DNA of 63,897 bases, filler included, from Hyphochytrium catenoides (GCA_900088475.1; 13 parts of 13 records of this genome joined end to end with filler, not necessarily neighbours in it), one strand, 5' to 3'; positions 28,756 to 38,404 are shown, numbered from the whole stretch's first letter. Numbers and translations: made by a program. Notes: generated from the letters alone by a model not told the origin.

Positions 28756-30983
28756 TGTTATAATGTATGGGATTTGAAGACACTCTTATTTAGGTTATGT
28801 GGTCTANNNNNNNNNNNNNNNNNNNNNNNNNNNNNNNNNNNNNNNNNNNNTTAATTAATTAANNNNNNNNNNNNNNNNNNNNNNNNNNNNNNNNNNNNNN
28901 NNNNNNGTTGACCTTCATCAACCTGACGATTAGTGAAGCCCAGGCTTGCGTTGTTTGAGCTGTTCAGGTAGTGCCATGCCTGGGACTGAATTGATTAACA
29001 TAGTTCTAGTAGTCAGATGAGCTACACATTTGAGTATCCACTCCTCCAACAAGGCGCTACGGGAAGGGTTTGCTCACACATCTTTCCTGGCTTGAAAGCG
29101 TGCCACAGCCAGGTTCACCACATTTCCTACCTCGATTTTTCGTCTCTTGCCAAGGAAGGTTGCCTCTTATTTGCAAGAGCACGGACACGAATGCATTAAA
29201 GAAAAGAACACAGGCAGCAGCAGCTGGTACTGGTGGGGGAGCATTTCTAGTGCGACAAGGATGATGTAAGGAATCAGCGACGAGCTCCGAGCTCGCCCAA
29301 TGGAGGTGCTATTTTCAAACAACTCTTTACTGGCGGGCGTGGAAGTGATCTGAGGCAGAAGTTCTTGGTCATGCAATCGTTGCGTATGCCGATCTTTGGA
29401 TCACCTTCATAGCTCACGCCTTCCTTCCAAGCCCACATGAAAATCGATGCGCAATACAAAGCGAGCAACGGCAACGCTGGCCACAAAGAGGCATGCACGC
29501 TTCCTCGTCTAGAGAAAATAGTAGGACGCTAGGTTTGGTAAGGGAGCAGAAAGAAGAAAGGATAGCAATAATTGAGGAGTTCAACCTCTCTAGAGCAAGG
29601 AGGTTCTTGAGTAGAGATTGATGCAGGATCTCGTAGGTGCTAATGATGGCAAAGTATAACAGTGCTGAGTGATGGCCATGACGGCAACGAACATGGGTTT
29701 ACGCTGCAAGCCAAAGTAACACCCACCCATTATTAGCACTTTACTTTGGAGACAACAACGCACCATTGACCGCTCATCGCCATCACCGGATTAGGATTTT
29801 GGCTGCAAGAGGCCAAAGCATTGCCCTCATCAGGCATTTTCCCTTTCTACTTAAGGTTGGCTCTGATGCCTTCAGTGGTGGTCGTACGACTACGTTTCTC
29901 ACTCAGTGGGCCAGCCCTACATTGCTTGTCTACTATCGAGCTTTGTACTGTCATTAGCTCAGAACCAACCAAGTTTATTACGTCATAGCTCGTTCCGTCC
30001 TCTGCACAAACAATTTTGTCAAAGATCTGACTCACCAAGGCATCTCTGTTCACTAGAAGAGTAACTAGAGCTTCTGGCGGGTTTGTCCTCATGGAAAAGA
30101 TGAACGAAGCGCTGTCAACGCCGCACGCATTCAAGGACCACGGTCCTCCTGCTCTAGATCCTCGACTCTTTACTGTCCGCGATGGTGCTCGCTCTATTAG
30201 CAACCGCTGGAATGTTGAGACCAAGACGGAAGAAGAAGGAAAAAAGACGGAAAGAAGATGATCACGCAGATTCTACTCGTAGAAGTTATTAGAGAAGAAA
30301 TCTTCACGTGTATCTACCAGTTCCCTAATAAGGCCTTACTGTACATAATATTTGTATAGTTCTAGGATGGCGGGAACTTCAAATCCAATAATATTGTACC
30401 TGTACAGGTAGGCTTGGAGTTCTTATTCCTAGACTTGTTATGGATACCTTGACTTGCCAATACAAGTACCGAGTACGGTTCAAGTAGAATAGAGGCTACA
30501 CAAGTATTTGGTACTTGCGGACTTGGCTCTGTGAAGAGTATGCGGTAGTGCTTTTTGGTTCTTGGTTGGCATCATCGCGAAGCAGCGAGGAAGTGAGAGA
30601 TTGAGCGCCCGTCGAGGCTTGTCACTGGTCAGAAGCCACACCAAGGGACCAAGGGAAGCAGCTATCATTATAAGGCCATTATGAAGGCTTTATCTGCTCA
30701 GCACTGCTTATGGAGCGATATAGAGCAGCAACCGACAATGTGATCACAAGCGGTGTAAACCTTAGCTGCTAACTTAGTCCGTTCTTGGTGCTGCAGCTGC
30801 GGACACCAATGGGAGAAGATGGCAAACAAGAGAGGCGTNNNNNNNNNNNNNNNNNNNNNNNNNNNNNNNNNNNNNNNNNNNNTTAATTAATTAANNNNNN
30901 NNNNNNNNNNNNNNNNNNNNNNNNNNNNNNNNNNNNNNTACATCTCTTGGGTCGCAAGTCATTCTAATGTTGAAAGCCGTACT

Positions 30984-31645
30984 TTTATTTAGTTACTAGT
31001 TGAGAAACTAATAAGCGGAGTAACTACACACTAGACGTGCAAGTACGAGTACCGTACTGTCGTCTCTACCACCTCCACACTCCACCACACCACCACTACT
31101 ACAGGTAGAGAAGACCTCCGGCAACAGCTCCAGGAAGCTGACCAAAGATCGCATCCTCCATATGCGCAGGCAGGGGCATCCGGTGGGAGACCATTTCAGC
31201 ATTGCAACGTTGCAAGAGGACAGAGATTCGTCTGTAAGCGGTGGTAGTGAGACATGAGAGAGGAAGACCTACACTCCCACACCTATCAAAGATAGCCCTA
31301 AGCCATTCTTTCAAGGTCAAATGAACGGTTTCCGTTGCCCCGCCAAAGGACTCCCACGCCAAGGGCCGGAAACCATAGCCTTGGTCCTCACATTCCTCGG
31401 CGTAAAGGGCAATTTTCCTCCTATGGGCATGCTCTGCGATGTATCCTGTCCGAGCCGCTGCATAAGGTAGGGTGTTGAGTTGCACCGAGTCGGAGACAGT
31501 AACGTCAAAGAGCGTGCAGACTCTTTGAGGCTCAAATCCCTCAATGGCCAGGTCACCTGGGCGATGACCATTGGGTAATACCCTGTCTGGAGGTTCAGCT
31601 CTGGCCAGAAGTCCTGCCGAACGAGCTAGGCCTAGGAGGAGGTCC
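30984..31645 (-). mobile_element. 5'-truncated non-LTR retrotransposon with a restriction-like endonuclease domain (CRE-like), 13-bp TSD
   Basis: Open frame DLLLGLARSAG...HRPGDLAI...LFDVTV...RRKIALY...C...GYGFRPLAWESFGG...YRRISVLLQRCNA, with a short 3'UTR ending A-rich. TGAAAGCCGTACT is duplicated at 30971-30983 and 31646-31658. Confidence 0.88.
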
Positions 31646-31985
31646 TGAAAGCCGTACTATGCCTCCGTCCATCGATCCTTTGGGTCGGCGCCGCCGTCCA
31701 TTGTCGCTGCTGTCAAACCTGCTGGCACCATGGACCTAGGAAGAAAAGCTCTCTTGTCCACAAAGAAGACAAGCTTAGTAAGCAAACGCCACAGCACTCT
31801 GGCTTTCTATTCCTAGATTGCCTTCTGCCTTCTCCCTCCTCTTCTCGCTCCCTCATCATCTCAGAAGAGCTGCTCCTCCCTCCATCATAGTCGGACCTCG
31901 CACCACTTTCGATCTGAACCTACCCACCCACCCACTATGCCAAGCTCTATCATGTGGGGATGGGTGGGCGATGTCCAGCTTGCAA

Positions 31986-32033
<48 letters not shown>

Positions 32034-32964
32034 AAGAGAGAGGAGACAAGGGAGAGAGTGAAAGAGAGAGAGAGAGAGGGAGAGCGCGAGAGAGAAAGAG
32101 GGAGAGAGAGTTGTGAGAGAGAGATAAAAGTGTGAGAGATAAACAGAGAGAGAGAGAGAGAAAGAGAGAGACAAAAGAAAGCTGGAACAGGTGTGGGGAG
32201 CTTTTGAAAAACCGCGCTCGTCTCTTCTACTTCCTAGTAGATTCTTGGAATCTTCGTCCTGTGGTGGTGCTGATGGTCATCCTCCTGGAAAGAGAAGGAT
32301 AGAAAGGGAAGAAGAGTTCAAGGAATTGAAGGTGGGCGTGCTGGTGCAGGTGGCGGCCGTGGCCCGCTGTGTGCAGTGCCGCCACTGTCGCCAGTCATCC
32401 CTGTTGTTGCCTCGCTCCTCCCTGCCCACCGGCTCTTGAAGAAGAAGACTTGGCTTGTGCATCAAGCTTGAGAGAGAAGAAGGAGGCGGCGAGGGAAGAG
32501 GGAGACAGGCAGAGGACAGCAAACAGTGCTGAGGAAAGCAAGAGAAAAGAGGCGTGACTGACTGAACCGACATGTTGACCGAAGGGACCTGCCGCTTCTG
32601 TTGAGCTGAGGCTCTCGCTCTGGCTTGTTGCCGTCCACCCGGTGTTCTTGTTGGCAAGCAGCGCGCGCAGAACCTCCAGCAGCAGCAGCCACCACTCATC
32701 ATGGTAGAGGATAGAAGCTTGACAAGAAAGGGGCAGCAGTCCAGGATCCTTCAGCTCATGAAGAGAAAGAAGGAAGACAGCGCTGGGTGGAAGGAAGAGG
32801 AATAAAAGACAAGAGAGGAAACAGTGGCCGTCCATAATGTGGCCTAGTGGCGTACCTCTCACTTGGCCTCTGGCGCCAGAGGAGAACCCCACAGCGCCTC
32901 AGTCCGTACCTTCTTCTTCCAGATCGTTTCGCTTTAGAGTCTCCTCTCTTTCTGAACAGGTCCC

Positions 32965-33001
<37 letters not shown>

Positions 33002-34285
33002 CTCCACTGGATATTTTTTAATAGCCTGTTTCTCTCTCTCTCGTCTTCTCTTTCTGTCGCAAGTGGGGCATGTGAGCTGGGAGGGTTGACATACGGCCTG
33101 ACGTGCCCGTTGGACCATTTGTCATAGCTTGGTTGGCTGGCAGCATCCTCTTCTTTGAGGAGTTGAGATGGCGGTAGAGAAGGAACGCGTTTCTCTCGCT
33201 TTCTGTCCGACGCCCAGACCAGACATCCATCTTATGTCTTCTTTGCTCTCTCTCTCTCTCTCTCTTCTCTACCTAGGCCCTGTCTCTTTCTTCCCTCTCT
33301 TCATCTTTCTCTCTCTCCCTTTCTCTCGTCTTCCTTCTGCTCCATCTTTAAGGAGCAAACCCTCCTTTATTGTTAAGTAAAATATCCCTTTTCCCCTTTG
33401 TCTTCGGGCACTTCTGATCTCCTCTGAGCTTTCCTTTGCCCTCCTGCTGCTTCTTCTCCTCTCTTTCTTCTCTCCCTTCTCTCTATCTCTGTCCCTCTCT
33501 CTCTCCTCTTTCCTCCTCCGTTTGCGCCAGCAGGAAGAGGTTCAACAAGTCAGAGCCGCTGATGGTCTGACTCTTGGGGCTGCGGAAGTGCATACACAGG
33601 ACACTGCTCGCAACACGTTGCACCGTTTGATGACCATCAGCGTCCTCCTTCCGCTGGCCAATGCTCTCAGTTAACCTCTCCTCCATGGCCTGTCTCTCTC
33701 TCTCTTCTCTCTTTGGGTCTGTCTCTCTCGTTCTCTCTCTACTAGGTTCTGTCTCTTTTTCTGAAAGCCCACCCTTCGCTGTCGGCAGCGACAGACATCA
33801 TGATAGCGCTCTGAACCCGAAGGACATGAACGCTATATAATATATCTCATAGCTATGCCCAAGAAAAGGACGAAGTTTTCTCTCCTTTGTCTCTCTCTCT
33901 CTCTTTCCTGTCCGTCCTGCTTTATCAGGTCGTCTCGCAGGCAAGCGTGAGCTGAGGTCGACCTACACCTCAGAAGCTGTGACCTGAACGTGAGGCCGCA
34001 ATCCCCATTACTAACCTCTGCCTTGCTTCAACTTCCGTCGTGGACGTCTGACTTCCCGCTACTGCGGAGTTGGGCAGAGAGAGATGACAGAAGCAGCTTG
34101 AGATGACTAATTGTCAGTGTTTCTGCTCTTTGTCTTGCTCCTCCGCCAGCTGTTGGGTCACTGCTGCGATGGCTTCGCCGAGGAGAAGATGCCGGGGGGA
34201 TGATGGACAGCCAACCATCCGACGGACAGTAAGAGACGGCTTAGCAAGAACTCCAGCACTCGCCTCTCCGTTCTCAAGCTTCATT

Positions 34286-34325
<40 letters not shown>

Positions 34326-34557
34326 CAAATTGGCCATCAACTCAGCTCAAGCGCTGCTGGTGGTCATCTCATTCTCCAATTTCCAACACCAGGAGCAGAC
34401 CTTCCGGTTGCAGCTAACTAAGAGGCAAGCCCAACTACACGCCAGCCCTACTACCAGCAGCAAGCACCATCCCGTTTTCCCTTTGGCTTCGTCTGTCTCT
34501 CGCCCATTTGAAGACATTTGCATAGATCTCCCTCCTCGTCTAGCATCAGACTGACCA

Positions 34558-35496
34558 ATGGCAACTAGTAACTTTTGCACCGTTCTTCCTCGGCCCACTA
34601 CCGGCCTAACTACTGCCGGGACCAGCTTATTTATCGCTCTTCTATTGGCGTTTACACCCTATGAAGCTGTTCAGGGTCATTCGTTCCTCGTCTGCACAGA
34701 CTTGAGACCCGATGGCTCCTGCCAGGGCTATCCAAGGAACTTCAAGGCCTTCACTGTCGTTCAGGACGGATACACTTACCGGCCTGGCCGCACGGGCGTG
34801 GCCTGTGATCCTGACAAGCAGAGTAGATCAGGCTCTGCTGGGTCATCGTACTCGTCCACCTTTCCAATGGCAAAGGCCAACCCAGGAGACTCTTTGACTT
34901 TGCAATGGCCAGCTAGGAACCACGCACCGGCCAATCTTCCTGGTAGGACTGTTCAGGTCTACTGGGAACCTAAGCCATCCGTCGCTAGCGACCCTTCTCA
35001 ATCAGAACTAGAGAACAACCTGCTGGCGGAGCTACCATTTGGAGACTATGGAAACGGACAGTCTGCCTGCGCGCCGGGCACGCCTAACGACAGACTCTGC
35101 AGTGGAAGCTTCAAAATCCCTGGAAGCGCAGCGCCAGGAGTCTACACAATGCAGTGGTGGTGGGAGTTCAACCCTGGAGAGTTCTATGCCACCTGCTTTG
35201 AGGTTAACGTGGGCAATGTTGATGTCGGGAACCCCGACGATGGGGAGGAAACCCCCACAGTCTCTCCTAGCAGCTCATTCCCGACGGCTGTCCCCACAAA
35301 CTCCACCGATGGCCCCACAGTCTCTCCGAGCAGTGCATTCCCTACTGCTGTCCCCACAAACTCTACTGACAGCAACTCTTCATCTTTACAACTCAACCTA
35401 CAGAAAACAGCAGAGAGTGATGATGACGAGGATGCGGTCGTAGACTGCGGGGCAAGTAGGCGGCTGCGGAGAAGCTTGAAGAAGCTCCAGTATTAG
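34558..35496 (+). CDS. Secreted protein with predicted N-terminal histidine (LPMO-like / histidine-brace copper protein), intronless, 312 aa
   Basis: Hydrophobic leader ending AVQG|HSFLVC; second His in WPARNH; GVYTMQWWW...EFYATCFEV tail; 6 Cys in the globular domain; Pro/Thr/Ser repeat linker. Confidence 0.75.
   Translation: MATSNFCTVLPRPTTGLTTAGTSLFIALLLAFTPYEAVQGHSFLVCTDLRPDGSCQGYPRNFKAFTVVQDGYTYRPGRTGVACDPDKQSRSGSAGSSYSSTFPMAKANPGDSLTLQWPARNHAPANLPGRTVQVYWEPKPSVASDPSQSELENNLLAELPFGDYGNGQSACAPGTPNDRLCSGSFKIPGSAAPGVYTMQWWWEFNPGEFYATCFEVNVGNVDVGNPDDGEETPTVSPSSSFPTAVPTNSTDGPTVSPSSAFPTAVPTNSTDSNSSSLQLNLQKTAESDDDEDAVVDCGASRRLRRSLKKLQY
35254..35373 (+). repeat. 2 x 60-bp coding tandem repeat (PTVSPSS[S/A]FPTAVPTNSTD[G/S])
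   Basis: Copies at 35254-35313 and 35314-35373 differ mostly at synonymous sites; each carries an NST sequon. Confidence 0.9.
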
Positions 35497-36274
35497 AGCG
35501 GCAAGCCTTGACGCCCCTCTCAAGGGGCACTGTGGGCGAAGGGAATTGACTCGAGGGCGGAGGCTCACAAAGCTCTCTCCGTCTCTCTCTTTCCCTCCCG
35601 TGTTCATAGAGCGTGTCTTCAACTCTTCAAGGCCCTCTCCACCCTCAATAGTCCTTCTGGCAGTACCTCTAGGATAATAGAGTCCGTGACTATGGCAGAG
35701 CAACATGCGGTTGTCCTGTCTCCGTCGTTGCGGCAAGCACTCCATTATTTAGATGATATCCTCAATATATTAGATCCATAATGTAAAGTCTCTCCACTTT
35801 GACTTCAATGTTATAACCTCGAGCCCTGTCCATAGGCAAAGCACATCTCTCTCTAAGAAGAATGACGCCTGCAGAGGCAAGCCGTCTCTCCTTCAAGCGC
35901 TTGTCCGTCTCCAACAGTAAGCCCTAGAAGACAGGGTAATCTTCTCTCTCAGGAGTCTCTGCTGTCTTTCTGCTGCTCTTCTCTTCTGTTTGTGCTTTCG
36001 TCCTTCTCCTGCTGAGTATCCTCGGCAGCATCGGGAGGCGGGCCCAGCGTGACATGAGGCGGGGATTATGAATATATCCATCTGTTATTTGTGTATCTGG
36101 GCTAAAAGGCTTCAGGTATCAGCGATAAAGCTAAGAAAGATTCGCACAGGTTGAAGAAGAGAGGAGGGGCGAAGAGAGGGAGAGGGAGAGAAACAGAGAG
36201 AAAGAGAGAGATAGGGAGAGGGAGAGAAACAGAGAGAGAGAGAGAGAGAGAGTAAGACAGACACAGAGAGAGAG

Positions 36275-36306
<32 letters not shown>

Positions 36307-36470
36307 TACACTCTGGAGCTAATAAGAGCTGAGTGTTGGAAGCATTGGGAAGGGAAGGAAGAGCTCACATTCGCGGTGGCAGCGCCTGCAGCACAGTTGA
36401 TAGCTTTCCACAAGCCTCCTTCCAGACCCGACGATCATAAAGGACGCAGAGCAACACGGGAAAGTTAAAG

Positions 36471-38404
36471 ATGGGAGAAGAAGTCGACGCGCAGAAAGCC
36501 CTGCAGTTCAAGGGCGCAACTTACCCTGTCTCCTTCAACAAGCGAGACCTCATCGTGTACGCTCTGGGCATTGGAGAGACAGACCTGCAGTTCACTTATG
36601 AAGACCATGACAACTTCAGTGCCTTCCCCACCTGTACGGACACGTGTGGCAGCACACTTCCCATTGCTTTTGACCACAGTCCTCCGCTTTGCTCCTCTCT
36701 CCCGTCTCTCGGTTCCCTCCTAGTGTTACTTCTAATAGGCGCTGCCTCCGCTTAGAGGGTGGCTAAGTCCATCGTCTCGGCTCCCTCTGTTTCCTACTTC
36801 TCTTCTGTCAATCGGCATGTTCTTAGCTTCCAGGCGCTCTATGTTGATCTCATTGTCTAGGTTTTCCTTTGATTGGTTTTGGCTCTCTCTGACTGTGTCT
36901 TCCTCCGTAGATCCGGTGGCATTGACCTTTAAAGGGACCTCTCAGGAGGTGGTTCCGTTCCCGCCGAAGACTATGCTAACGTTTCCTGAGGGAATACCGA
37001 TGATCAACCCAGCGATGATTCTTCATGGAGAGCAAGAGATTGAGATTATTACGCCTCTCAATCCAGAGGGAGAGGAACTGACAGCGCACCAGTCTGTTCT
37101 CTCTCTCTGGGACAAGGGGAAAGGCGCTCTGCTGGAGATGGAGACCGTGATGAAGAACCAGAAGGGAGAAAGCGTTTGCAGAATGATTTCTGGGAGCTTC
37201 ATGAGAGGTCTCACAGGCTTCAAGGGTGCAGGACGGCAGCCGCCGCCTAGGTAAGATGACTTGCAGAGCAAACTAAAACATGATGAAGCCTCTATCTCAT
37301 TTGATCCTCACTCTCTCGTTCTCTCTCCCGCTGCAGAGCTAAAGCGCCTTCTCGTGCTCCTGACGCGGTCGAGACCATCAGCACCTACCCCAATCAAGCA
37401 GCTCTCTATAGGCTCTCAGGGTAAGAGACCATTTCGGCTCTTCTCCTTTTGCGTGGACTAATTATTCGACATTCTCTTCCCTCTCTGCTCACTGGCATTT
37501 CCTTTCACAGAGACTACAACGCCCTTCACATTGATCCTTCCATAGCTCAAGCTGTGGGATTCAAGCGCCCAATCATCCATGGACTCTGCTCCATGGGGAT
37601 TGCCACAAGGGCCATCCTTAAGGCCCTCGCAGGCGGAGATCCAAAAAAGCTGAAGAAGATTAGCGTCAGGTGGCTGAACTAGCTTCTTTCTTTAATCACT
37701 TTTGTACGCGAGTTGAACCAACAAAGATTGCCTCAGCGTTCCTCCTCCATAGCCCAATCTGGAGCAGTCCTGGTCGGTTCTTACTATTTTGGTCTTGTTT
37801 CTCTCTACATCTCGATGCATCGCACCTAGTCATTTGACTTGGCCTTCTTGCTTACCATAAACAGCCAAAGTCTCCCATCCCCTGATCTCATAGAGTTTGT
37901 GTCTCAAGATTTGTCCGACTTACATTCGTGAAGTTGCGACCTCAACTGCTTGACTTCGGCCGCGGTAACCCTCTATTGTATTGCTCTATAATTGCACTAC
38001 TCAGGTTCTCGTCTCCTGCCTACCCGGGGGAGACCTTTGTGACCTCAATGTGGAAGGAGGGAGACCGAGTTATCTTTCAGACCAAGATTAAGGAGAGGGA
38101 CGTGATCGTGCTGGATGGCGGTGTCGCCGTCCTAGAAGGAGCTGCGGCGTCCACGCCATCACCTTCCACTCAAGGTAAACCTAGATATCTGCTCGATGTT
38201 CTGTCTTTATGGGCTCTGCTCGGTTGCACCGTGGCACCAGTGCAACCGACTTTGCGCTACGCAATCTCGATCCTTCAGGGTTGACACCAGGAAACATGTG
38301 TAGACTGCAAAGTGTACCCATGCTCGTCAGCGCCTCTTTCCGTTGTACCCTGACTCACTAGATCTATGACTCCTACAGGCTCATCATCCTCTACCCGGCT
38401 GCAA
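36471..38404 (+). CDS. ECH2: Peroxisomal enoyl-CoA hydratase 2 (MFE-2 hydratase / MaoC double hot-dog), 3' end cut by the contig end
   Basis: RDLIVYALGIG, FSAFPT, ILHGEQ, DKGKGAL, catalytic YRLSGDYNALHIDP...GFKRPIIHGLCSMG, VRFSSPAYPGET. Confidence 0.92.

What the first reader, a model, noticed from the sequence alone, without database searches (positions are those of the whole stretch)
34558..35496. Unclassified histidine-brace (LPMO-like) secreted copper protein
Seen: the leader ends in AVQG directly before His (codon 34678-34680). A second His sits in WPARNH (mature residue ~82), and an E-F-Y motif (Tyr ~170) lies in a G-x-Y-T-x-Q-W-x-W...E-F-Y-x-x-C-x-E-V tail. A glycosylatable Pro/Thr/Ser linker follows, with no recognisable CBM. 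Established: His1 / His~70-100 / [QE]-x-[YF] is the copper-site layout of lytic polysaccharide monooxygenases (AA9-11, AA13-17) and related X325/Bim1-type copper proteins. Inference: the HSFLVC...C.GYPRN...WPARNH signature does not resemble the characterised CAZy LPMO families I know. It recalls uncharacterised HSW...GYPR secreted proteins, so it may be a new LPMO or copper-chaperone family in a protist. The gene is intronless in an intron-rich genome.
Basis: partly seen in the sequence, partly recalled or inferred. Interest (0 to 1): 0.78.

Follow-up and report, generated by a model that had tools for sequence, protein, structure and literature searches.

The report
Uncharacterised LPMO-like secreted copper protein
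This intact protist gene encodes a secreted protein with the fold and copper-binding "histidine brace" of the polysaccharide-cutting LPMO enzymes; it belongs to a eukaryote-wide family (overlapping Pfam DUF7492) for which I found no experimental study.

Summary
ORF 34558-35496 (+) encodes 312 aa: a leader ending AVQG, then His41. Only one other histidine exists in the whole protein, His122 in WPARNH. An E-F-Y motif follows (Tyr210), then an unfolded Ser/Thr/Pro tail.

The protein is not an orphan. An exhaustive search found 365 cluster representatives with the consensus HSWxxC...CxGYPR. They come from amoebozoans, dictyostelids, an ichthyosporean, a glaucophyte, chytrids, Mortierellomycota and metagenomes.

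In 64 aligned domains His1 is present wherever the N-terminus is complete, His82 is invariant, and Tyr170 is Tyr or Phe in 63. About half the relatives match Pfam DUF7492. The window protein itself scores below that model's cut-off.

The AlphaFold2 model (pLDDT 91.7) matches only LPMOs in the PDB (Z 10-12), about equally for AA10, AA15, AA13, AA11 and AA9. All alignments start at residue 1. By sequence, AA11 is the nearest solved family, through the C-terminal strands only.

Close relatives carry CBM2, GH5 cellulase or CBM1 modules. This favours a true polysaccharide oxidase over a copper carrier.

Verdict: a real, probably functional histidine-brace LPMO-fold protein in an uncharacterised but already catalogued family. 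Activity and substrate are inferred, not shown.

The parts
34558..35496 (+). Complete uninterrupted ORF, 312 codons plus stop
   Evidence: Colinear with relatives from the leader to the end of the domain. DNA contigs of two runs of the same organism confirm the sequence.
34558..34677 (+). Leader, residues 1-40: long n-region, hydrophobic core LFIALLLAF (residues 24-32), then TPYEAVQG with Val at -3 and Gly at -1
   Evidence: Hydropathy. Predicted helix 19-31. In 89 relatives with a Met start the His follows a leader with A, G or S at -1 in 84 cases.
34678..34680 (+). His41 = mature His1, proposed N-terminal copper ligand (amino group plus side chain)
   Evidence: Codon cat. His in 61 of 61 non-gap rows. 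Model residue 1 aligns to His1 of solved LPMOs.
34678..35217 (+). LPMO-fold domain, residues 41-220 (mature 1-180), with six conserved Cys (precursor 46, 55, 83, 171, 181, 213)
   Evidence: AlphaFold2 pLDDT 91.7, pTM 0.88. Foldseek top hits are all LPMOs, E down to 4e-7. VIA-align Z 10-12. Cys conservation.
34921..34923 (+). His122 = mature His82 in WPARNH, proposed second copper ligand
   Evidence: Invariant in 64 of 64 aligned domains. It is the only other His in the protein.
35179..35187 (+). Glu208-Phe209-Tyr210 (mature E168-F169-Y170): proposed second-sphere carboxylate and axial tyrosine
   Evidence: The family profile aligns this motif to E138-M139-Y140 of the AA11 structure 4mah. Tyr in 60 and Phe in 3 of 64 rows. 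Glu in 37 and Gln in 10 of 64.
35218..35493 (+). C-terminal extension, residues 221-312: Ser/Thr/Pro/Asp-rich, three N-glycosylation sequons, acidic then basic end, no hydrophobic GPI-type end
   Evidence: Composition and sequons. pLDDT 35-52 and no secondary structure. No Pfam hit. No CBM-like exon found downstream in the piece.
35254..35373 (+). Two tandem 20-aa repeats, PTVSPSS(S/A)FPTAVPTNSTD(G/S), inside the tail
   Evidence: Read directly from the translation.

Best explanation
The gene encodes a secreted protein. Signal peptidase cuts after AVQG and leaves histidine as the first residue.

The free amino group and side chain of His1, together with the side chain of His82, hold one copper ion (a histidine brace). 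The site sits on one face of an LPMO-type beta-sandwich. Tyr170 lies on the axial side and Glu168 in the second sphere, as in AA11 enzymes.

After reduction to Cu(I), the site would use O2 or H2O2 to oxidise and break a glycosidic bond in an insoluble polysaccharide. The substrate is most likely cellulose or a related beta-glucan, from the cell's own wall, cyst or matrix, or from food. The glycosylated disordered tail would act as a spacer or wall tether.

Shown here: the intact gene, the conserved residues, the fold, and the family and its appended modules. Inferred: cleavage, copper binding, catalysis and substrate.

The protein belongs to a eukaryote-wide uncharacterised family whose core clade is Pfam DUF7492.
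For: 1. Gene: the ORF is intact and is the only long frame with homologues. The four domain polymorphisms are all synonymous.
2. Leader and His1: relatives have A, G or S at -1 in 84 of 89 cases and His directly after the leader.
3. Conserved site residues: His1 61 of 61, His82 64 of 64, Tyr170 60 Tyr plus 3 Phe, Glu168 37 Glu plus 10 Gln of 64.
4. Fold: the model has pLDDT 91.7. All 50 listed Foldseek matches but the two PmoD chains are LPMOs. Z is 10-12 to AA10, AA15, AA13, AA11 and AA9, each from model residue 1.
5. Sequence link: the family profile hits AA11 structures 4mah, 9exj and 7p3u at E 1.8e-5 to 1.6e-4, with E-x-Y aligned to the AA11 E138-x-Y140.
6. Polysaccharide context in close relatives:
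- The Paradermamoeba isoform P0152 (40% identity over 219 aa) carries CBM2 at E 3.1e-16.
- P0008 carries a GH5 cellulase at E 3.8e-45.
- The closest relative, P0001 from Gloeochaete, has a CBM2-like C-terminus by language-model features, score 0.91.
- Other relatives carry CBM1, CBM96, CBM18-type and Carb_bind modules.
Against: - No copper binding or activity has been measured for any member that I could find.
- The window protein itself has no CBM.
- The second-sphere position is Glu or Gln in only 47 of 64 rows.
- There is no clear RNA evidence. The only possibly-RNA run holds one 232-nt contig.
- SignalP was not available.
- Histidine-brace LPMO-fold proteins without oxidase activity exist, such as X325/Bim1 (PMC10952591, PMC13353379).
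Confidence: 0.6

Rival explanations
1. It is a non-catalytic copper-binding protein on the LPMO scaffold, like fungal X325/Bim1. It would capture or hand over copper at the cell surface and would not cut polysaccharides.
For: - The window protein has no CBM, and its Ser/Thr-rich tail resembles those of wall or surface proteins.
- X325 structures 6ibi and 6ibh are matched at Z 9.0-9.2.
- The second-sphere Glu/Gln is not universal.
- An acidic residue five positions after the Tyr (Asp or Glu in 62 of 64 rows) could in principle be an extra ligand. This was not tested.
- Reviews stress that a histidine brace does not predict oxidase activity (PMC13353379, PMC10952591).
Against: - The C-terminus is charged (RRLRRSLKKLQY) and is not a hydrophobic GPI-type signal.
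- Closest relatives are fused to CBM2, GH5 cellulase and CBM1. Such fusions make sense for an enzyme acting on polysaccharide.
- The axial Tyr/Phe and the E/Q-x-Y motif are kept as in active AA9 and AA11 enzymes.
- AA10 and AA15 enzymes score higher (Z 11-12) than X325.
Confidence: 0.22
2. It is merely a very divergent member of an existing CAZy LPMO family (AA10 or AA11), so the family is not distinct.
For: - UniRef names dictyostelid and chytrid relatives 'Chitin-binding type-4 domain-containing protein'.
- A review reports an AA10 gene in Dictyostelium by peptide-based annotation (PMC6690862).
- Three of 150 relatives give weak LPMO_10 hits and six give weak AA9 hits.
- The family profile reaches AA11 structures at E 1.8e-5.
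Against: - The window protein has no AA9 or LPMO_10 Pfam hit even at E<=10.
- Dictyostelid relatives P0004, P0012 and P0018 have no Pfam hit at E<=0.01.
- The AA11 match covers only the last ~45 residues.
- Structural Z of 10-12 is about equal for five families, with none standing out.
- Pfam keeps the core clade as a separate entry, DUF7492.
- dbCAN and CAZy family models were not available, so this is not fully excluded.
Confidence: 0.1
3. It is an unexpressed or decaying gene copy, for example a retrocopy since it lacks introns, with no present function.
For: - There are no introns, whereas the neighbouring gene has several.
- No holder run is on record as RNA.
- The exact protein is absent from the gene-call collection.
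Against: - The frame of 312 codons is intact and every family-invariant residue is present.
- All four polymorphisms in the domain are synonymous, while replacements occur only in the leader n-region and the tail.
- Base composition equals that of the flanks.
- A run guessed to be RNA holds a 99% identical 232-nt contig over 34602-34833.
Confidence: 0.05

Closest known systems
Pfam DUF7492 (PF24320), a domain of unknown function found mainly in fungi
   Same: Homologous over the whole domain, from His1 to the final strand. The window domain hits bona fide members P0028, P0032 and P0037 at E 1e-16 to 1e-17, and these score 47-62 bits on the Pfam model. They share the HSWxxC...CxGYxR start, the invariant second His, the WxW...E-x-Y-x-x-C-F-D end and six Cys.
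   Different: The window protein scores 18.5 bits against a cut-off of 27. Its nearest relatives score 19.6-23. It therefore lies in clades outside the Pfam boundary, and in the quick tree it falls outside the 17-row DUF7492 core clade. DUF7492 has no assigned function, so membership explains nothing about mechanism.
AA11 lytic polysaccharide monooxygenases (Aspergillus oryzae AoAA11, PDB 4mah/4mai; A. fumigatus AfAA11A/B, 7p3u, 9exj)
   Same: N-terminal His after the leader. An E-x-Y motif aligns residue for residue with E138/Y140 of 4mah, within a G-x-Y-T-x-x-W-x-W ... C strand pair. Same fold, Z 10.1, rmsd 2.7-3.3 A over 133-142 residues.
   Different: Sequence similarity is limited to the last ~45 residues. 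The N-terminal HSWxxC...CxGYPRN region and the WPARNH loop have no AA11 counterpart by sequence. Appended modules in relatives are cellulose-type (CBM2, GH5, CBM1), whereas AA11s are mostly chitin-active (PMC8668981 abstract).
AA10 and AA15 LPMOs (e.g. Lmo2467 5l2v, ScLPMO10C 4oy7, CBP21 2bem, Thermobia AA15 5msz)
   Same: Best structural matches: Z 11.3-12.0, 145-148 residues at 2.9-3.3 A, from residue 1. Secreted, with an N-terminal His.
   Different: No Pfam LPMO_10 hit for the window protein. Sequence identity in the structural alignments is 7-15%. From my own knowledge, not tested here, most AA10s carry Phe at the axial position and place the second-sphere Glu/Gln on a different strand.
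X325/Bim1 (DUF6595) LPMO-like copper proteins of fungi
   Same: LPMO-type fold with a histidine brace, secreted, no CBM, Ser/Thr-rich C-terminal region. Z 9.0-9.2.
   Different: X325 proteins have a GPI anchor and an Asp as fourth copper ligand (PMC13353379, PMC10952591). The window protein has no hydrophobic C-terminal signal, and its relatives are fused to cellulose modules. Whether a carboxylate reaches the copper could not be tested.

Membership tests
LPMO-fold histidine-brace proteins (superfamily level) | Signal peptide whose cleavage leaves His as residue 1 | tested here: met
   Hydrophobic core at residues 24-32, Val at -3 and Gly at -1 before His41. In 89 relatives, A, G or S is at -1 in 84 and His follows directly. 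This is rule-based: SignalP and N-terminal sequencing were not available.
LPMO-fold histidine-brace proteins (superfamily level) | Second, internal histidine conserved | tested here: met
   His82 is present in 64 of 64 aligned domains and is the only other His in the protein.
LPMO-fold histidine-brace proteins (superfamily level) | Axial Tyr or Phe near the C-terminus, in a Q/E-x-Y/F motif | tested here: met
   Tyr170 is Tyr in 60 and Phe in 3 of 64 rows. Position -2 is Glu in 37 and Gln in 10. The motif aligns to E138-x-Y140 of 4mah.
LPMO-fold histidine-brace proteins (superfamily level) | Immunoglobulin-like beta-sandwich of LPMOs | tested here: met
   Model pLDDT 91.7. Foldseek top hits are almost all LPMOs. 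Z 10-12 over 133-160 residues. Atlas shape match TM 0.83 to a cluster auto-named LPMO.
LPMO-fold histidine-brace proteins (superfamily level) | His1, second His and Tyr clustered at one flat face | not testable with these tools
   Model coordinates are not returned by the tools, so the only evidence is that residue 1 aligns to His1 of the solved chains.
LPMO-fold histidine-brace proteins (superfamily level) | Binds one Cu and oxidises a polysaccharide | not testable with these tools
   This needs biochemistry. No paper on any member was found.
Pfam DUF7492 (PF24320) | Score at or above the gathering cut-off (27 bits) | tested here: not met
   18.5 bits, E 1.2e-3, residues 177-222 only.
Pfam DUF7492 (PF24320) | Significant full-length homology to members above the cut-off | tested here: met
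   phmmer E 1.2e-17 (P0028), 3.6e-17 (P0032) and 1.3e-16 (P0037) over query residues 1-178/185. These three score 47.6-62.2 bits on PF24320. 76 of 150 relatives match at E<=1e-3.
CAZy AA11 | Sequence similarity over the whole catalytic domain | tested here: not met
   Single sequence E 0.19. Profile E 1.8e-5, but only profile positions 138-182.
CAZy AA10 (Pfam LPMO_10) and AA9 (Pfam AA9) | Match to the family model | tested here: not met
   No hit for the window protein at E<=10. P0001 scores 24 bits against an AA9 cut-off of 27.8.
CAZy AA13-AA17 | Sequence similarity to solved members | tested here: not met
   In the profile search of all PDB chains only AA16 7ze9 appears, at E 0.067. AA13, AA14, AA15 and AA17 are absent at E<=10. 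dbCAN HMMs were not available.
X325/Bim1 | C-terminal GPI-anchor signal | tested here: not met
   The C-terminus ...DCGASRRLRRSLKKLQY is charged and has no hydrophobic end.
X325/Bim1 | Asp carboxylate as fourth equatorial copper ligand | not testable with these tools
   No coordinates were available.

The most novel reading that the evidence does not exclude
The window protein and its HS[WF]xxC...CxGYPR relatives form a separate, ancient eukaryotic LPMO family, a candidate new CAZy AA family. Amoebae, glaucophytes, ichthyosporeans and early-diverging fungi would use it to oxidise cellulose or related beta-glucans, either in their own walls, cysts and stalks or in food. That would extend oxidative cellulose cleavage to protist lineages where it has not been studied.
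Probability: 0.4. Interest if true: 0.7.

Novelty: new member of a known kind. Interest (0 to 1): 0.5.

Why it matters
I found no experimental work on this family in the searchable library. It nevertheless keeps every hallmark of a histidine-brace enzyme and is spread across several eukaryotic supergroups. Some members are fused to cellulose-binding modules and to a GH5 cellulase.

If it is active, it would give protists, amoebae and early fungi an oxidative tool for cellulose-like polymers. Dictyostelid stalks, amoebal cysts and glaucophyte walls are candidate targets (my own background knowledge, not tested here). It would also add a scaffold for comparing how the second sphere tunes copper reactivity.

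If it is inactive, it would be a second large group of LPMO-fold copper binders beside X325. That also bears on how well a histidine brace predicts function.

Tried and rejected
- Word-index protein search with the full protein found only one relative. The exhaustive search was needed.
- NCBIfam gave nothing.
- P0088, a 2134-aa hit with 11 matched stretches, looked like a tandem-domain relative. The family profile does not match it, so it was a low-complexity artefact.
- I looked for a downstream CBM exon that splicing might attach, using tblastn with the C-termini of P0001, P0152, P0008 and P0004. Nothing was found.
- P0001's C-terminal domain shows no BLAST similarity to the CBM2 of P0152. 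Its CBM2-like nature rests only on language-model features and a weak Pfam hit.
- The read tools returned only DNA-type contigs, so transcript ends, strand and expression could not be shown.
- The careful tree did not finish. The quick tree leaves the window protein unresolved within a 47-row group.
- AA18, mentioned in a 2026 review and in PMC13431639, which cites Santos et al. 2025 for it. I take it, from my own knowledge, to be the bacterial CelOCE type and unrelated; not tested here.
- Nine literature searches found no paper on DUF7492 or on this family. Subscription-only papers are not covered.
- The organism was not identified. Run names are coded and the length filter of the word search made the neighbouring gene unsuitable as a query.

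Full report
**1. The observation**

The piece 30939-38404 holds one long homology-supported frame at the stated place: 34558..35496 (+), 312 codons, ATG start.

The translation begins with a 22-residue polar stretch. A hydrophobic core LFIALLLAF follows, then TPYEAVQG, then HSFLVCTDLRPDGSCQGYPRN.
- Codon 34678-34680 is His41.
- His122 (34921-34923) ends WPARNH.
- E-F-Y occupies 35179-35187.
- These two histidines are the only ones in the protein.
- Six cysteines lie in the domain.
- Residues 221-312 are Ser/Thr/Pro/Asp-rich. They hold two 20-aa tandem repeats and three N-x-S/T sequons.

**2. Is it a real gene?**

DNA contigs from two runs of the same organism cover the ORF.

The other runs differ at 13 positions inside the ORF:
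- Four fall in the catalytic domain and one in the leader core. All five are synonymous.
- Replacements are confined to the n-region of the leader (V9A, P13S) and to the tail (S274A, A293V).

The sample is small, but the pattern is what purifying selection on the domain would give.

Base composition does not differ from the flanks.

The downstream gene (36471-38284, +) is an MFE-2 hydratase-2/MaoC gene split into at least four coding pieces. So the host is an intron-bearing eukaryote, and this gene is uninterrupted at least from the leader through the domain.

No run on record as RNA holds the stretch. One run guessed to be RNA, from another organism label, has a 232-nt contig 99% identical over 34602-34833. 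Expression is therefore not shown.

The exact protein is not in the large gene-call collections.

**3. Relatives**

The word-index search found one relative, a 5'-truncated transcript of the glaucophyte Gloeochaete. It is 50% identical over residues 104-218.

The exhaustive search with the mature domain found 365 cluster representatives at E<=1e-3 and 124 at E<=1e-10.

Named members come from:
- Paradermamoeba levis;
- the dictyostelids Acytostelium, Tieghemostelium and Cavenderia;
- the ichthyosporean Chromosphaera perkinsii;
- MMETSP transcriptomes;
- the chytrid Rhizophlyctis rosea;
- the Mortierellomycota Lunasporangiospora and Podila.

All are 'hypothetical protein', or carry the automatic UniRef name 'Chitin-binding type-4 domain-containing protein'.

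Eighty-nine of the 150 listed proteins start with Met, carry a hydrophobic leader and then H-[ST]-x-x-x-C. The residue at -1 is A, G or S in 84 of them, and the median His position is 23. The family consensus is HSWxxCxD...CxGYPR...PMA...G...WPAxNH...C...C.G....P.....G.Y...W.W.FN.GE.Y.TCFD.

In the 64-domain alignment:
- His1 is His in all 61 rows with a complete N-terminus.
- His82 is His in 64 of 64.
- Tyr170 is Tyr in 60 and Phe in 3.
- Position 168 is Glu in 37 and Gln in 10.
- The six Cys are each present in 60-63 rows.

**4. Family assignment**

The window protein gives only a sub-threshold Pfam hit: DUF7492, 18.5 bits against a cut-off of 27. It gives no AA9 or LPMO_10 hit even at E<=10.

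Of the 150 relatives, 76 match DUF7492 at E<=1e-3, the best at 1.2e-21.

A well-supported 17-row clade in the quick tree consists of bona fide members at 47-62 bits. There the Pfam model starts at the N-terminal His. The window protein's nearest relatives score 19.6-23 bits or nothing.

The protein is therefore homologous to DUF7492 over its full length: E about 1e-17 to members above the cut-off. It lies outside the Pfam boundary.

**5. Link to characterised LPMOs**

By sequence, the family profile reaches only AA11 structures (4mah 1.8e-5, 9exj 3.9e-5, 7p3u 1.6e-4). The match is limited to the last ~45 residues. There G-x-Y-T-x-x-W-x-W and E-x-Y-x-x-C align with the AA11 strand pair, and E168/Y170 fall on E138/Y140 of 4mah. 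From my own knowledge, Tyr140 is the axial tyrosine of AoAA11.

AA16 (7ze9), AA10 and AA9 chains appear only at E 0.07-1.3. AA13, AA14, AA15 and AA17 do not appear at all. A profile of the DUF7492 core alone behaves the same way.

By structure, the AlphaFold2 model of the mature domain is confident: pLDDT 91.7, pTM 0.88. All 50 listed Foldseek PDB matches are LPMOs except the two PmoD chains.

VIA-align gives these Z values:

| Family | Z |
|---|---|
| AA10 | 10.2-12.0 (one small 142-residue domain, 5aa7, 9.5) |
| AA15 | 11.4 |
| AA13 | 10.7 |
| fusolins | 10.1 |
| AA11 | 9.5-10.1 |
| AA9 | 8.6-9.8 |
| X325 | 9.0-9.2 |

Every alignment starts at model residue 1, and at the first residue of the chain wherever the entry is numbered from the mature end.

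No family stands out. The distance is of the order seen between different AA families, not within one (my judgement).

Against the ESM Atlas, the best shape matches are two Mucoromycota clusters without a Pfam family, auto-named 'Lytic polysaccharide monooxygenase' (TM 0.83) and 'Chitin-binding type-4' (TM 0.78). A DUF7492 cluster follows at TM 0.70.

**6. Enzyme or copper carrier?**

The window protein has no CBM. Its tail is predicted unfolded, with pLDDT 35-52. Its C-terminus is charged and not GPI-like. No CBM exon lies downstream in the piece. Disordered C-terminal extensions are common in all LPMO families (PMC8615602 abstract).

The informative evidence comes from relatives:
- A Paradermamoeba isoform, 40% identical over 219 residues including the leader, carries a CBM2 at 60 bits (E 3.1e-16). 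It ends in a hydrophobic stretch.
- A metagenomic relative, P0008, at 39% identity, is fused to a GH5 cellulase (E 3.8e-45).
- The Gloeochaete protein ends in a domain that looks like CBM2 by language-model features (0.91; 15 of 20 hits in that family). This is a lead only.
- Other members carry CBM1 (4), CBM96, Chitin_bind_1 and Carb_bind modules.

Such fusions are expected for an enzyme working on insoluble glucans, not for a copper shuttle. The retained axial Tyr and E/Q-x-Y motif point the same way.

Against this, no member has been assayed as far as I could find. The second-sphere residue is not universal. X325 shows that the brace alone does not prove activity (PMC10952591, PMC13353379).

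I put the fold and brace at about 0.9, a catalytic LPMO at about 0.6, and cellulose-type substrate at about 0.35.

**7. Novelty**

The kind (LPMO-fold histidine-brace protein) is known. The family is already catalogued as a DUF, and pipelines already attach LPMO-like names to some members. So this is a new member of a known kind, in an unstudied family.

Nine full-text searches found no paper on DUF7492 or on this group. One review mentions an 'AA10' gene in Dictyostelium from peptide-based annotation, which may refer to this group.

The family would become notable if activity is shown. It would then be a candidate new AA family spanning Amoebozoa, Holozoa, fungi and Archaeplastida.

**8. Limits**

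- There was no SignalP, no dbCAN and no model coordinates, so the copper-site geometry was not measured.
- There is no clear RNA evidence.
- The organism was not identified.
- The tree is only a quick one.

Noticed in passing
window 36471-38284 (+): Multi-exon gene for a peroxisomal MFE-2 hydratase-2/MaoC-type dehydratase. Coding pieces at about 36471-36632, 36979-37251, 37512-37679 and 38000-38110 match MFE-2_hydrat-2_N and MaoC_dehydratas. It shows the host is an intron-bearing eukaryote.
   Followed up: partly
window 31099-31571 (-): Two overlapping ORFs of 128 and 84 aa with no Pfam match. They might be a decayed or lineage-specific element. The origin is unknown.
   Followed up: partly
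window 31985-32171, 32966-33004, 34285-34322, 36173-36306: Long AG/TC dinucleotide microsatellites flank the gene. Assembly contigs of the public runs break at them.
   Followed up: no
window 34551-34602, 35743-35814, 35987-36071: Within single runs, two contig versions coexist with clustered differences and small indels. This is consistent with two alleles or haplotypes in the sequenced strain.
   Followed up: no
relatives P0007 and seven others: Eight of the 150 listed secreted relatives end in a WW domain (best E 7.2e-13). This is an unusual partner for an extracellular LPMO-like domain and is unexplained.
   Followed up: no
relative P0152 (Paradermamoeba levis): Architecture: leader, LPMO-like domain, Pro-rich linker, CBM2, Ser/Thr stretch, hydrophobic C-terminal end. 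This suggests a surface-anchored, cellulose-directed version of the family.
   Followed up: partly
ESM Atlas feature search, row 3: A cluster of hypothetical proteins, mostly from Nucleocytoviricota (giant viruses), scores 0.90 by language-model features. The family may have viral members. This is a lead only.
   Followed up: no
window 34602-34833 and 35314-35530: Runs labelled with two other organisms (X5, guessed RNA; X6, kind unknown) hold short contigs 98-99% identical to parts of the ORF. They could be related strains, contamination or transcripts. This is unresolved.
   Followed up: no
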